From: Stylophora pistillata
Lineage: Eukaryota
Reading direction: 5' to 3'
NCBI RefSeq assembly: GCF_002571385.2
Contig: NW_019217940.1
Span: 1-64,000 of the forward strand
DNA: 64,000 nt
Of this stretch, positions 27,666 to 33,600 are shown piece after piece. The notes beneath the pieces were generated by a model. It saw only the letters and a list, made by a program, of their open reading frames with translations. It did no database searches and was not told where the DNA came from. Made by a program: the position numbers and the translations under genes. Position 1 is the stretch's first letter, and every line of letters starts with the position of its first letter.

Positions 27666-30600
27666 CTAACAGATTATTGCTCTTCTCTCTCCTCTTACCT
27701 CAATAAACTGTAAAGCCTTCTTGGTTTTTAGTGCCTCACTGTTTATTGTCGTGACAGAGCCATGATGGCATATTATTTTCCTTTGTTTTCTTCTCTCTAT
27801 ATTTTCAGGTGGGTAACCATATTGATGTAGTAAGTGGGAAATGGACAGCTCAGGATGCAGGCATTGGAGCTGGTGTTGACTCTTACTTTGAGTATCTCCT
27901 TAAAGGAGGTATTCTGTTTAGTTCTCCGAGATTGGTGGACATGTTCAAAGGTGAGCCAGGATAATTTACTACTCTGGGTACTGGTACAGTATTTCTTGTT
28001 TAAACACTAACATCACAGCACATGTGGTCCAAGTTTGATTCACAGACCTGGGGCCTGTTTCTTGAAGGTTGTGGTAACTTAATGGGCCTGGATAGCTATT
28101 CTGTTTTCTTTCTAGATGGGGGTTTCAAAATGTTTGAAAATTTTCAAGACTATCAGCCAAATAAACAAAATGGACTCTATAGTTAACATACTTAATCTGT
28201 AATCTCTAAATTTTTACTTCAAAATATTGCTTTGGGTCAGTACATGGAATTCCAGTGCGTCTGTATATGCAAAAACTGCCAACTACTAGAGGATGCTGTT
28301 GCTCTTTGTTGTCAACTCTGTTTAAATTGCAAAATTACAATACAAAGTTACTTCAGGCACCCATTGTACTTTCAATTTGACACAGTTGTTTATTTTATCA
28401 TTATTTATTCTTATTTTCTGTCGAAGAATTTTATGACAAAGTTCAGCAGTACCTGAAGATTAGTGATTGGTATGTGTGGGTCCATATGGATAAAGGTCAG
28501 ATTACAATGCCAATCTTTCAGTCTCTCGATGCCTATTGGCCAGGACTTCAGGTGAGTGACAGATGTTATTGATTGGTAGATTGCAAAACTTATTGCAACA
28601 CAACCATGTGATTGTGATTGCAGGCATCTCCTTTGTAAATTGATAGCACTTGATGTTAGTCAAAATTTTGTAGTCTTAACCCATTGATACCTGAATGAAA
28701 TTGCCAGCGACCCACCCCTAATTCCTTGGCGATTTTTTAACACTTCAGCGCGAGCGCTAAAAGTAAACCATATGTGCAGTAAACACACACACAAGATCAG
28801 GTTTCAAGACTGTTTATTTCAAGTCAGATAATTCAGCGGCCAAACTATCAAATAAAAACGGCCAAAAGAGTTCAACTCGATGTCCCAAACCAATCTGATA
28901 GTAAGAAATTAATTCTTTTTTTACCGTGCGACAAAATCCCGAAATTGTTTTCCGTTGGAAAGGAAAGTAAAATGCGCCAAACTAAACCTAGACTTGCCCC
29001 AAGTCGTCTTTTTATGCTCGTACGGACTTTGAGAAAGTCTAAACTAAACCAAACATCAACTGATGGCACTTACAGTGAGATAAATTTGCAGCTAATTTAC
29101 CAAGAAATATCGGGTAATAAGAGCGAAACATAAGGTAAAAACCACTTAGAAAAGAGAACAAATAATTTGTGAAGCGGGGCAAAACGCCAAAATTGATTTT
29201 CACAGCGAATGATAAGCGAATTGTGTAATTGATGACGACGAACGCAAACCATATTTTTTACAATATTTCTAGTATTTTTTATGTGGCAAAATTAGCGGCC
29301 AAATACCAAATAAGATGAAGTCAAACAGAAGCCAGATAATCTCTAAAAACAAACCCGATTACGAGAATCGTACATCACAATTTCCTCGCCCGACTAATGT
29401 AAACAAATCAACACGGCAAAACCGGAAATGTAAATAATTTCTAAATACAAAACACGGCTAAACCCAGTAATACTAATCATTACGGTAACTGCTATTCTTA
29501 ATTATTCGAGTTTCTTTTAAGGTTGTATCAACACTTGAATAATGAAGACTCAGGAGATGAAGGATAAAGCGAAACGTTTATAAATTTACAACATATGATA
29601 ATCTGCGAAGCAAACTTCCTTACAAAGAGCTACGCTGCACTGCACGCATTCAAAAGTACTTTCTACAGGGCGACCTTTGGGAGTTTTTGTACCCACCCTC
29701 TTACACTGAACACATTGCCTTTTTCTTCCCTTAATTTTATCAATAAAATGTTTCCCTTCGCTCCCCTCCTGAAGAAAATGAGCTTCAATCTTACGGCGCT
29801 TGGATAATTGTGCCGCAGACACCCTAGTCGAGTATCCCCCAATCAACTGTTTAGCTAACTCTGTCCTAAAGTTCAATTGCCTAAGCTTACCCATCCCTTG
29901 GCTTAACCGACGGTAATTACAAAGAACAAAGGCATTACATATAGCTACATCGATAAGAAACCAAAATATATACCGATACCACTTGCTAGAAGAACGACCC
30001 ACTGAATAATATTCGCGTAATTGATCGGCGCGATCAACACCTCCCATAGAGCTATTGTACAAATCAATTACAACTGGTTTTGGAACTTCCACATCACCCC
30101 GATTAACTTCAACATCATCGGCTAGAGGACTTACATTAGTTGCCATAACACTGACATCCCGTTTGTCATGCCACTTCGTGAAAACAACGTGGCCTTTCTG
30201 ACGAACTAACTTCTCCCCAACCCGCAATTAGCCATTTTCAAAACGAGCGGCGGTCTGGGTACGATTTGCCACCCTAGAGGCTCTTGGGATCGTTTGGAGG
30301 GACAGCAAGAACATGGTGGACAAGAGCAATGCAACCGTGCGAGACGCTCTCAAGGTTATTCTGACAGAAGAAGATATACCTGGTGCAAAAATTCCTCGCG
30401 AAACTGTAGAACAATGTAGCGTCGTTCAATTGAAAAGGTGGTTGCTGTGCAGGGGAGCAAAGACTACGGGAAATAAGAAAGCATTGATAACAAGGTAGGT
30501 TCACTCGAGGTGTATATTTTCATTTAGTGGTGTACATATGAGCTTAAATTATATCGAAGGAGAAATTGTGTCGTTTTATTTTGTTTCATTCCAGTCATAT

Positions 30601-33600
30601 ATCATGTTCATATTTTTCAGAGTTCAAGATTACATTAAGCATGGACTAGACGTTAAATATCTCCGTGATCCAGACGGTGGACTACACCTTCTCCGCAAGA
30701 AGGCTCAACTTGGAGTGCTGGAGGAGGAAGAGCCGCAGCTCAACCAATTCTTTCCAAAAGAAGGATACAAACCTGATTTTAAAGATTTGCCTAAGATAGC
30801 TTTTGGAACCGTTTGGCAGTTTATGATTGAAGGAGTTGAAAGTAAAAAACAACTTTCCACTGCAAAGCCCCTAGTCAAGGGATTTAACTTCTTCAAGTCA
30901 GGGCATGTTTTATACATTGGACATCTGCACCAAAATGGAAAACATTATGTAAAAAGCCAAGTTCTGCCATCGATGAAAAAAGATAAAGTATACTCTTGTT
31001 TTCTGTTAATGTCATCCATAGGTTGTGTGTTAAAAGCACACTGTAAGTGTCCTGCTGGTATTGATGGCCGTTGTAACCATGTGGCATCTACATTGTTTGC
31101 CCTTGAACAAAGCTTTAAGGAGACGAAAAGGAAAAATTCGGATGCAGCTGAGTCCTGCACATCTAAGCCTTGTAAATGGAATGTGCCAGGGAAACGCAAG
31201 GGTCCAGTGACACCTATCTCTGAGATGAGCTTTGTCAAACATGATTATGCTAAAGAAAAGAAAGCAAAAAGGCCAAAGCTAGCCTCATGTCCAGCACAGA
31301 ATGGTACCTGTGTATCAGAAAAAAAAGTCTGGCCAAGTGAAAGATTACAAAACTTCCATAAATCTTTAAAAGAATATCAAATGAAATCTGGGAGAGCTGT
31401 TGGATGGACACATATTCTTCCTCAAAAGGTAAATAATCTGGAAGAGCCACTCATCTCACCCATCAAATGTCATCCAATATCAGCTGATGAACTAAGAGTG
31501 AGATTTGAGAAAGTGAAGAGGAACATTAATTTTGATGAAGAAAAAATAAAGAAAGTAGAAGAGCAAACACGAGGGCAGTCAAACTCAAATTTGTGGCATC
31601 ATCACAGGCAGCCCAGGATTACTGCTACAAATTGTTACAGAATAGCTGTGCAAAGGGAAACAACATCACCAACAAAAATCATCCAAGATGTCCTTGGTTA
31701 CAAAAAACCATTTCAGAGTAAATACATGCAAGAAGGACTTGAAATGGAGGACAGGATCATAGCTGCTTACAAATTATTAAAGCAGGGGGAAGGGGTTACT
31801 GATATATCCGTAGAAAAATGTGGCTTTTTCATTTCCAAGCATCATGGGTTACTCGGAGCAAGTCCAGACGGATTAGTGTGTGACCCTTCTGCAGAAGACA
31901 GTAAGGGTCTTCTTGAAGTGAAATATATTCAGATGGAAAAGCAAGNACCACCTTGTTGTGATTTGTTTCATTTGTGGAAAACTGTATCTTCTGTTCTAAA
32001 AATTTTGGTATAACAAGGCTTGCACCAACAGAAGCTAATTCATCCTGACAATTGAACCCTTTGTCAGCCAGTACCTGGTCACCAGGATTTAGTCTGTCTA
32101 GAAAACCACTAAGAACAGTTATTTCCTTATCTGAGGTTGAACCAGGAAATAAGTCACTCACAAAACATAAAACACCGCTTGGCGTTATGCCCAACAGTGA
32201 TTTCATGGTGGTTCTTGACTTGTATGATGAAAAACAGGTAGACTGTGAATCAAGAGCAGATGGCCTCTCCATTTCAAATTCCGTGCAATCGACAATGACT
32301 GTTACGTTAGGCAACAGTTTCTTAAAACTGTCAGGCCTATAACATTGAAGTACTTCTCTTGGGGGGATGATGATAAGAGGTTCAAATTCCCTCCTCAAAA
32401 ATGGAATCCAGGCATTTACAATCTTAGAGACAGTTGATCTTGAAACCAAAAATCGATGAGCAAGATCATTCTCAAACAAACCCAGCCTCAAGCGCAGCAT
32501 AACAAGGGTAAACTCCTGGAATTTAGTAAGTACTCTGGGTCTCCCAACATTACCGTTCGTGGTGGTCCTTTTGTGCCCATAATTAATATTGCTAGAGGCT
32601 TGTTCTACAGTTTTGTAACAAAGAATAAAAGCATTGTAATCGGGAAAGCCGGTGTAGAATGCAATATCATCATCTTTATCTTTAAATTTGCTTATGTCAA
32701 ATCTATTGTTATCTAAAGCATGCTTCAAGCTTTCGATTTCCTTTTGTAATTTGCTGTTCACCTCTTTTATGTTGTTGTTTTCTTTCTCCAACTGCTGAAT
32801 CTCTCCCTTAAGCTTAACAATTTCTTGTTCTCTTGTTTGCATTCTGTTGTATAAACTGTTTAGTTGGTCTCCAGTAAGTAACGTTTGCATTTCCACACTG
32901 GTACTGGTGTCAGCATTAACATTCATATTTTCTGTCTGTTCTTCAAATTTAAAGTTCGCTTCCTGTGGTAATTGAGCAAGTGCTGTTTTTCTTTTTTTGG
33001 TTTGCTCTATTTTCTGTACATCTTCGAAACTGGCCCTCTTGCGTTCTCTACGTTGAGCTGTCGGTTTTGTCCATGGAAAAATTGAAGGCAAGTGCGTTCT
33101 GCTAAGTTTTTCTCCTCCATCGAAATGAACTGAGCAAATCCGCGTACTCGTAGAATCTAATTTCAGAGTCTCGTTCCTCATAAGAACCACGTACTTTCTA
33201 CGTATATGAGGGTCTTTTGGAATTCTATAATACTGAAGGTTAGGTGCATTTCTGTAACTATTAGTGCAGCCTGGAATACAGCAGTTATAGTGTGCCATGT
33301 TTGTCACACGTCAGCTGTGCGTTTGTTTACCTTCACGCTGTCCCTCCAAACGATCCCAAGAGCCTTTATGGTGGCAAATCGTACCCAGACCGCCGCTCGT
33401 TTTGAAAATGGCTAATTTATTTTTTGCACATGGTGGCAAGTCTTTACGATTACATCTTACAGTCCCGCAGGCGTAAGTATCATTAGCTTTTAAATCCTCT
33501 AATAGCTTAGTTGACGTGAAAAAATTATCGAAAAATACATGATGATTTCTATTCATAAAAGGTCTAATTAACTTAGTCACTACATCATAACCTAACCCAT

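What the first reader, a model, noticed from the sequence alone, without database searches (positions are those of the whole stretch)
30229..33414. Young two-gene transposon pairing a THAP-DDE transposase with an intron-containing SAP-SWIM-YqaJ nuclease, both starting just inside near-identical 77-bp TIRs
Seen: two convergent ORFs, both open up to a single N. Their ATGs lie 6 nt (30313) and 38 nt (33298) inside TIRs that differ at only 2 of 77 positions. Known: DDE plus YqaJ with an AT target duplication is the ISL2EU architecture, and YqaJ is a phage lambda-exonuclease-like fold whose role in transposition is unclear. Inference: the TIR may double as an inward-facing promoter for both genes. 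The SAP-SWIM-nuclease may process donor or target ends, giving a recently active two-component system. Its EVKY (rather than EVKC) motif is a variant worth noting.
Basis: partly seen in the sequence, partly recalled or inferred. Interest (0 to 1): 0.8.

Follow-up and report, generated by a model that had tools for sequence, protein, structure and literature searches.

The report
Young ISL2EU transposon in a coral
This is a very recently active copy of an already described kind of two-gene "cut-and-paste" transposon (ISL2EU: a THAP-DDE transposase plus a lambda-exonuclease-like nuclease) in the coral Stylophora pistillata, so the architecture is ordinary, but the family is expressed, spliced and polymorphic, and could be used to test what the nuclease does.

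Summary
The sequence features are real. There are 77/78-bp TIRs with 2 mismatches. Two convergent genes start 6 and 38 nt inside them, one has a 126-nt GT..AG intron, and AT duplications lie in an AATT target. The element sits in a piggyBac transposase ORF.

The single N at 31946 stands for about 866 nt. Five other 100%-identical copies and four RNA assemblies show this. The full element is 4051 bp, and the 3' ends of both genes, including the transposase's third catalytic residue, are hidden. I did not read those letters.

The architecture is the published ISL2EU one (Han 2015, PMC4482050). That paper lists a 4088-bp Acropora family with the same two ORFs. This is a new member of a known kind, from Stylophora pistillata.

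"EVKY" is the norm in this family: Y in 23 of 53 relatives, never C.

New here:
- At least 10 loci are 100% identical.
- The intron is spliced in polyA RNA.
- An empty-site contig in RNA of other samples suggests insertion polymorphism.
- TIR blocks are conserved across three families.
- A complex model docks the nuclease protein's linker onto the transposase (score 0.70, best control 0.00).

The TIR-promoter idea could not be tested, because only contigs were available. The scan also noted another copy of this family (s1-783070).

The parts
30227..30228 (.). Left target-site duplication AT. It lies inside the AATT at 30226-30229.
   Evidence: 33 of 40 family ends are flanked by AATT; the empty-site joint shares 4 letters between its two sides.
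30229..30306 (+). Left terminal inverted repeat (78 nt counting the terminal T, 77 from AGCC). It has three blocks conserved across families.
30313..30494 (+). Nuclease gene exon 1. It encodes a SAP-like motif.
   Evidence: SAP E 2.5e-4, 21 bits, below Pfam's cut-off of 23.9. The relative in L040 scores 25 bits.
30495..30620 (+). Intron, 126 nt, GT..AG. It splits a codon after its second base.
   Evidence: sequence; a joint skipping these 126 nt in 3 of 4 polyA RNA runs. Unspliced contigs are also present.
30621..31945 (+). Nuclease gene exon 2, visible part: SWIM-type module, linker and most of the lambda-exonuclease-like domain.
   Evidence: Viral_alk_exo 1.6e-14, YqaJ 4.1e-9..
31042..31080 (+). 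SWIM-type CxCx7CxH signature (C141, C143, C151, H153 of the exon-2 piece).
   Evidence: conserved in 44, 53, 51 and 51 of 53 relatives. Pfam's SWIM model itself gave no hit.
31210..31425 (+). Linker segment that corresponds to the predicted transposase-binding surface of the relative's protein.
   Evidence: (interface residues 254-322 of P0020), mapped onto the window.
31546..31944 (+). Visible part of the lambda-exonuclease / YqaJ domain. D416 (31867-31869), E432 (31915-31917) and K434 (31921-31923) are present.
   Evidence: D, E and K are invariant in 53 of 53. (3SYY, lambda exonuclease).
31946..31946 (.). Single N standing for about 866 nt. It hides the 3' ends of both genes and the spacer between them. 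Not read.
   Evidence: 866-bp spacing in C1411, C1068, C297, C1812, C847. (866 letters between the sides in 4 runs).
31947..33298 (-). Transposase gene, visible 450 codons. THAP is at 33077-33283, a coiled-coil-like stretch follows, HTH_Tnp_4 is at 32384-32530, and DDE_Tnp_4 is at 31952-32293 with D337 and D412. The third acidic residue is hidden by the N.
   Evidence: DDE_Tnp_4 5.7e-27, HTH_Tnp_4 3.2e-14, THAP 4.2e-12..
33337..33414 (-). Right terminal inverted repeat.
33415..33416 (.). Right target-site duplication AT.
29586..30228 (-). C-terminal half of the host piggyBac-type transposase ORF, interrupted by the insertion.
   Evidence: DDE_Tnp_1_7 profile positions 251-349 and zf-Tnp_2.
33415..34549 (-). 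N-terminal half of the same piggyBac-type ORF.
   Evidence: DDE_Tnp_1_7 profile positions 2-252; contigs join 30225 to 33414 without the element.

Best explanation
The stretch is one copy of an autonomous ISL2EU-group DNA transposon (PIF/Harbinger-ISL2EU-Spy superfamily) of the coral Stylophora pistillata. Its true length is 4051 bp. It recently inserted into the ORF of a piggyBac-type transposase. Shown: long TIRs; an AT duplication inside an AATT target; a THAP / coiled-coil-like / HTH / DDE transposase gene; and a convergent gene for a SAP / SWIM-type / lambda-exonuclease-like protein with an intact D..ExK centre. Also shown: many 100%-identical copies, splicing of the nuclease gene's intron in polyA RNA, and an empty version of this very site in RNA of other samples. 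Inferred mechanism: the transposase binds the conserved TIR blocks through its THAP and HTH parts, cuts the element out and pastes it into A|AT|T. The second protein is carried into the same complex through a helical linker that docks on the transposase's catalytic domain; this comes from a model only. There its 5'-phosphate-dependent 5'-3' exonuclease domain would work on the cut DNA. It would either trim the non-transferred strand of the element or, more likely, resect the broken donor so that it is repaired by copying. Only 84 and 116 nt of the element lie upstream of the two ATGs. Any promoter of the element's own must therefore lie in or overlap the TIRs, which is a logical constraint and was not measured.
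For: Domains. TIRs. Target and duplication: 33 of 40 ends are flanked by AATT, and the empty-site joint has 4 shared letters. The relative L040 has AT on both sides where the outer base differs. Published definition of ISL2EU: THAP+HTH+DDE transposase, YqaJ ORF, AT duplication, A|AT|T target, and a 4088-bp Acropora digitifera family with ORFs of 525 and 646 aa. Copies: at least 10 loci at 100% identity, two of them complete at 4051 bp. Expression: the intron joint is seen in 3 of 4 polyA runs from 2 studies. Polymorphism: the empty-site contig matches the flanks with 0-1 differences in 263 nt, while the nearest piggyBac paralogue is 92% identical. Nuclease: D416, E432, K434, W325 and R329 are invariant in 53 of 53. 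Closest structures are LHK-Exo 3SYY (E 8.7e-14 by sequence; Foldseek TM 0.76) and lambda exonuclease. Same gene pair in a second genomic family and in L040. Binding: complex model score 0.70 against a best control of 0.00. That mark was reached by 51 of 78 solved complexes and 2 of 108 mismatched pairs; the runs agree in at least 56% of contacts and the partner's pLDDT is at least 68.
Against: The window copy cannot be shown to be intact, because 866 nt are hidden. Those 866 nt include the third catalytic residue of the transposase and the last ~104 codons of the nuclease gene. The 100% identity between copies could be inflated by a short-read assembly that filled repeats with pooled reads. 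The RNA evidence is from assembled contigs, which give no strand, no starts and no levels. Unspliced contigs and contigs running from TIRs into other flanks are also present, so DNA carry-over or read-through transcripts exist. Transcription of the transposase gene itself is not shown. The complex model was made on a relative's pair (46-51% identity), not on this copy, and is a model's confidence, not a measurement. No experiment on any ISL2EU nuclease was found in the papers searched.
Confidence: 0.85

Rival explanations
1. The nuclease gene is incidental cargo, a captured host or viral gene that plays no part in transposition.
For: No experiment shows a role. Non-autonomous derivatives of about 1.1 kb that lack it were still mobilised, though they lack the transposase gene as well.
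Against: The same convergent pair is kept in three families whose proteins are only 46-67% alike and in most autonomous ISL2EU families surveyed. Catalytic residues are invariant in 53 of 53 relatives. The complex model passes its controls.
Confidence: 0.07
2. The second protein mainly recruits and imports the transposase, like the Myb-like protein of Harbinger. Its SAP and SWIM-type parts would bind the ends, and the nuclease activity would be dispensable.
For: The two-gene logic is shared with PIF/Harbinger, where both genes are needed. The predicted contact is through the linker, not the nuclease domain. SAP and SWIM-type modules are conserved.
Against: The nuclease centre and the residues matching lambda exonuclease's 5'-phosphate pocket are invariant. 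Such invariance would not be expected of a dispensable activity. The transposase has its own THAP and HTH DNA-binding parts.
Confidence: 0.2
3. The copy is not recent. The identity between copies is an assembly artefact, and the empty-site contigs come from a paralogous piggyBac copy rather than an allele.
For: Many copies are broken by gaps or N, as in short-read assemblies. Genome searches give lower bounds only.
Against: The copies have different flanks. The nearest paralogue of the flank in the assembly is only 92% identical, while the empty-site contigs differ at 0-1 of 263 positions in four runs. RNA contigs of four samples match the element without any difference over about 3 kb.
Confidence: 0.1

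Closest known systems
ISL2EU group of the PHIS superfamily, e.g. ISL2EU-ADig / Repbase ISL2EU-1_ADi of Acropora digitifera (Han et al. 2015, PMC4482050, Table S2)
   Same: About 4.05-4.09 kb. AT duplication in an A|AT|T target. ORF1 has DDE, THAP and HTH (525 aa there; about 500 aa expected here). ORF2 has YqaJ (646 aa there; 606 aa for the identical Stylophora protein). The host is also a coral.
   Different: The TIR is listed as 33 bp there and is 77-78 bp here. The first TIR bases here are T-AGCC rather than the usual GG. Sequence identity to the Repbase entry could not be measured, as no Repbase or Dfam was on hand. Acropora proteins found here are about 48% identical for the nuclease protein. 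The Acropora transposases were compared only with L040's transposase, at 58-63% identity.
PIF/Harbinger transposons
   Same: Related DDE_Tnp_4 transposase. Two genes, both thought to be needed. The second protein binds the transposase.
   Different: The Harbinger duplication is 3 bp (TWA), and its second protein is a Myb/SANT-like DNA binder without a nuclease. Here the duplication is AT and the second protein is a nuclease.
Lambda exonuclease / LHK-Exo (PDB 1AVQ, 3SYY) and herpesvirus alkaline nucleases
   Same: The C-terminal domain has the same fold and the same D..ExK centre.
   Different: This protein carries SAP-like and SWIM-type modules and a long linker in front, and has no known annealing-protein partner. 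Its oligomeric state is unknown.
Tn7 TnsA/TnsB heteromeric transposase (from established knowledge, not tested here)
   Same: A DDE transposase paired with a nuclease of the PD-(D/E)xK superfamily. This would be the analogy if the predicted complex is real.
   Different: TnsA is a restriction-enzyme-like endonuclease, not a lambda-exonuclease homologue. No evidence here shows that the coral nuclease cuts the 5' strand.

Membership tests
ISL2EU group (PHIS superfamily) | DDE_Tnp_4-type transposase with THAP and HTH parts | tested here: met
   DDE_Tnp_4 5.7e-27, HTH_Tnp_4 3.2e-14, THAP 4.2e-12. The third catalytic residue is hidden by the N.
ISL2EU group (PHIS superfamily) | Second ORF with a YqaJ exonuclease domain | tested here: met
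ISL2EU group (PHIS superfamily) | 2-bp AT duplication within an A|AT|T target | tested here: met
   (AATT at 33 of 40 ends). (the empty site has one AATT). A 4-bp AATT duplication cannot be told apart within this family. L040's flanks favour AT.
ISL2EU group (PHIS superfamily) | Transposase groups with Repbase ISL2EU transposases in a tree | not testable with these tools
   No Repbase or Dfam sequences on hand. Relatives found are unnamed coral and other animal proteins with the same three domains.
PIF/Harbinger group | 3-bp TWA duplication and a Myb/SANT-like second ORF | tested here: not met
Spy group | No duplication, insertion in AAA|TTT, single ORF | tested here: not met
   the joint skips 3188 nt, which is the 3186-nt element plus 2 nt. 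There are two ORFs.
SWIM zinc finger (PF04434) | CxCxnCxH signature recognised by the family model | tested here: inconclusive
   The signature is present and conserved, but Pfam gave no hit even at E 10. A 61%-identical Stylophora paralogue is named SWIM-type by UniRef, and 11-12% of members of related clusters carry PF04434.

The most novel reading that the evidence does not exclude
The ISL2EU nuclease is a bound subunit of a heteromeric transposase. It would be held on the DDE catalytic domain by its linker helices and would process the 5' strands at the element's ends or at the donor break. That would make ISL2EU a eukaryotic counterpart of the DDE plus PD-(D/E)xK pairing known from Tn7. 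This apparently live coral family would be a ready system to test it.
Probability: 0.25. Interest if true: 0.7.

Novelty: new member of a known kind. Interest (0 to 1): 0.35.

Why it matters
The architecture itself is textbook for ISL2EU, so the finding does not add a new kind of element. What the YqaJ-type nuclease does in ISL2EU transposition has been open since the group was described. None of the three surveys read says what it does, and the searches turned up no experimental paper on it. This family offers identical full-length copies, spliced transcripts, a probable insertion polymorphism in a model reef coral, and a specific predicted contact between the two proteins. Together these make the question testable. 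An active transposon would also be of use as a marker of genome change, or as a gene-transfer tool, in corals.

Tried and rejected
1. EVKY as a notable variant is rejected. In 53 relatives the residue after the catalytic K is Y 23, K 10, L 6, F 6, and never C.
2. The TIR mismatches as a clock are rejected. The two differences are fixed between left and right ends in all young copies.
3. Pfam SWIM gave no hit at E up to 10. The motif was judged by its conservation instead.
4. Transcript starts could not be read. All runs on offer were assembled contigs. In the listed rows, main contigs reach 30296 on the left (one run) and 33348-33349 on the right (three runs), which are mirror positions in the TIRs. 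Others reach 30277, 30244 and 30226, and some run into other flanks.
5. Rfam found only two tRNAs elsewhere in the window.
6. The look-up of encoding contigs had no record for P0024.
7. The ends of the C118 copy of the second family were not found in the stretches fetched.
8. A 4-bp AATT duplication versus AT plus a terminal T..A cannot be separated within this family.
9. Not done on purpose: reading or filling the letters under the N; fetching P0001, which comes from another copy of this genome and spans the N; and searching the joined exon1+exon2 protein, since the exons were searched apart by reference.
10. The largest protein search (search of protein representatives) was not used.
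Full report
OBSERVATION. The described features are in the sequence. The ends 30229/30230-30306 and 33337-33413/33414 pair as inverted repeats, with mismatches only at 30274 and 30277. On the + strand an ATG at 30313 lies 6 nt inside the left repeat. On the - strand an ATG at 33298 lies 38 nt inside the right repeat. 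The + gene has exon 1 at 30313-30494, a 126-nt GT..AG intron at 30495-30620 that splits a codon after its second base, and exon 2 from 30621. Both genes are open up to the N at 31946, for 441 and 450 codons.

DOMAINS. Pfam finds the following.
- Exon 1: a SAP-like motif at E 2.5e-4, 21 bits, under the 23.9-bit cut-off.
- Exon 2: Viral_alk_exo (1.6e-14) and YqaJ (4.1e-9).
- The - strand gene: THAP (4.2e-12), HTH_Tnp_4 (3.2e-14) and DDE_Tnp_4 (5.7e-27).
The exons were searched apart, by reference. The joined protein was not searched.

THE N HIDES ABOUT 866 nt. Both catalytic domains stop at the N: DDE_Tnp_4 at profile position 111 of 158 and YqaJ at 115 of 150. In five other 100%-identical copies (C1411, C1068, C297, C1812, C847) the two sides of the N lie 866 bp apart, and two complete copies measure 4051 bp between their ends. 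Contigs of four RNA runs carry 866 letters between 31945 and 31947.

What lies under the N can be estimated from relatives.
- Relatives of the nuclease protein run a median of 105 residues past the cut.
- The identical protein annotated in this species is 606 aa (length only).
- A related transposase runs 53 residues further and holds the invariant third acidic residue there.
The window copy therefore cannot be judged intact. The open stretches beyond the N are each gene's frame running on into the antisense strand of the other gene. I did not read, fetch or fill the hidden letters, and I did not fetch protein P0001, which comes from another copy of this genome.

WHERE IT SITS. The element interrupts a piggyBac-type transposase ORF on the - strand. 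DDE_Tnp_1_7 profile positions 2-252 lie to the right of the element, and positions 251-349 plus the zinc finger lie to the left. Taking out the element and one AT joins the two halves in frame (read). In all four polyA RNA runs a contig joins 30225 to 33414, skipping 3188 nt (the 3186-nt element plus 2) with four shared letters. In the two outermost depth bins the depth equals that of this one contig. These contigs differ from the window's flanks at 0-1 of 263 positions. The nearest paralogue of the flank in the assembly is 92% identical. The empty site is therefore most likely an allele, meaning the insertion is polymorphic. Contigs show presence, not absence, so this needs PCR or long reads.

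TARGET AND DUPLICATION. Of 40 family ends, 33 are flanked by AATT, and the next base outward is variable. This fits the published ISL2EU target A|AT|T with an AT duplication. Within this family, AT plus a terminal T..A cannot be told from a 4-bp AATT duplication. In the relative L040 the outer base differs on one side while AT and the terminal T..A are kept, which favours AT.

THE FAMILY IN THIS GENOME. The organism is Stylophora pistillata. The assembly has 398 Mb in 5513 contigs.
- At least ten loci carry parts at 100% identity, with different flanks. Several are broken by gaps.
- The two TIR mismatches are the same in every young copy, so they are a built-in asymmetry and not age.
- A second family is 67% identical in DNA. 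It has the same gene order, AATT flanks and 79-bp TIRs, at C1078:18477-22814.
- About 1.1-kb derivatives at 84-93% identity are built from two inverted copies of the transposase-side end.
- One caution: a short-read assembly can make repeats look more alike than they are.

EXPRESSION. PolyA RNA libraries of two studies hold 0.96-0.97 of the stretch's sampled words. Three of four runs show a joint that removes exactly the 126-nt intron, alongside unspliced contigs. The nuclease gene is therefore transcribed and spliced. For the transposase gene nothing can be said, since contigs carry no strand. Contig ends cannot show transcript starts. In the rows listed, main contigs reach 30296 on the left (one run) and 33348-33349 on the right (three runs), at mirror positions in the TIRs. 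Others reach 30277, 30244 and 30226, and some run from TIRs into other flanks. The promoter idea stays untested. What the sequence itself imposes is that only 84 and 116 nt of the element lie upstream of the two ATGs. The relative L040 shows the same layout, with 12 and 72 nt between TIR and ATG.

THE TIRs. Three blocks are shared by the three families although their proteins are only 46-67% alike. They are an AA.CGAG block, a TGGGT block, and a G.TTG...GACAG block at the inner edge next to both ATGs. That speaks for function along the whole repeat, whether protein binding, promoter or both. The GGG-core block recalls THAP-binding sites; this is from memory and is a lead only.

THE NUCLEASE PROTEIN. 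In an alignment of 53 relatives, D416, E432 and K434 are invariant. So are W325 and R329, which by spacing match W24 and R28 of lambda exonuclease, the 5'-phosphate pocket (the numbering is from memory). The CxCx7CxH signature is kept in 44-53 of 53, although Pfam's SWIM model gives no hit. The residue after the catalytic K is Y in 23, K in 10, L in 6, F in 6, and never C, so EVKY is the family norm. The closest solved proteins are LHK-Exo 3SYY (E 8.7e-14 by sequence; Foldseek TM 0.76), lambda exonuclease, mimivirus R354 and herpesvirus alkaline nucleases. These came from a model of the relative P0020 with mean pLDDT 80.

THE TWO PROTEINS TOGETHER. For the intact pair of the relative L040, a complex model gave a score of 0.70 against a best control of 0.00. 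The chains were transposase residues 170-483 and nuclease protein residues 89-633. That mark was reached by 51 of 78 solved complexes and 2 of 108 mismatched pairs. The runs agree in at least 56% of contacts, and the partner's pLDDT is at least 68. The contact is made by the linker between the SWIM-type module and the nuclease domain (P0020 residues 254-322), which maps to window 31210-31425. On the transposase it touches parts before and after the HTH, part of the catalytic domain and the C-terminal tail. This supports binding but does not show it, and it was not made on the window's own, cut, proteins. I know of no solved complex of this kind, so a pass from memory seems unlikely.

WHAT IS KNOWN. 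Han et al. 2015 (PMC4482050) define ISL2EU by AT duplications in A|AT|T, a DDE/HTH/THAP transposase and a second ORF with a YqaJ exonuclease domain. They list ISL2EU-ADig (Repbase ISL2EU-1_ADi) of the coral Acropora digitifera: 4088 bp, ORFs of 525 and 646 aa. Two further papers say the same. Relatives of both proteins are common in anthozoans and occur in other animals. The element is thus a new member of a known kind. None of the three surveys read says what the nuclease does, and the searches turned up no experimental paper on it.

HOW IT MOST LIKELY WORKS. This is cut-and-paste transposition by the THAP-HTH-DDE transposase at the conserved TIRs, with integration at A|AT|T. That follows from family membership. 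The second protein is most likely a bound partner of the transposase (model only, about even odds). Its conserved 5'-phosphate-dependent exonuclease would resect cut DNA. I favour resection of the broken donor, which would steer repair towards copying the element back, over cleavage of the non-transferred strand. Both are inference. A purely recruiting role like Harbinger's Myb-like protein is the main rival.

VERDICT. Interest is modest. The value lies in a seemingly live, expressed family and a testable contact between its two proteins.

Noticed in passing
window 29586-30228 and 33415-34549 (- strand): The host piggyBac-type transposase ORF is split cleanly by the insertion. The uninterrupted form is present in polyA RNA contigs of four runs, so this piggyBac copy or allele appears to be expressed.
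   Followed up: partly
G000 C50:323674-324751, C11:1403586-1404677, C597:16627-17853 and about 10 more loci: About 1.1-kb non-autonomous derivatives at 84-93% identity. They are built as two inverted copies of the transposase-side end (TIR plus 330-560 nt of the THAP-coding region), giving very long inverted arms.
   Followed up: partly
G000 C1078:18477-22814; also C118:582604-585775 and C165:557640-558939: A second ISL2EU family, 67% identical in DNA. It has the same convergent gene pair, 79-bp TIRs with 6 mismatches, and AATT flanks.
   Followed up: partly
L040:4907-9005 (ENA contig of 1.76 Mb): A 4099-bp relative with perfect 82-bp TIRs and AT duplications. Its nuclease gene is intronless and includes the SAP part, so the intron of the Stylophora family is not shared by all relatives.
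   Followed up: partly
protein P0014: A 572-aa relative (54% identity) is filed in NCBI as a hypothetical protein of a Gammaproteobacteria metagenome bin. It is most likely animal DNA binned by mistake.
   Followed up: no
protein P0159: An 830-aa Stylophora protein named 'THAP domain-containing protein 11' carries the full THAP/HTH/DDE_Tnp_4 set. It looks like an ISL2EU transposase named after its THAP domain.
   Followed up: no
window 8567-8639 (-) and 42549-42620 (+): Two tRNA matches above Rfam's gathering score.
   Followed up: no
G000 C1411:25111-25137 and C1068:50951-50965: The flanks of two full-length copies read N right up to the AAT (C1411) or to within about 15 nt of the insertion site (C1068). 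These are gaps or withheld stretches beside the repeat.
   Followed up: no
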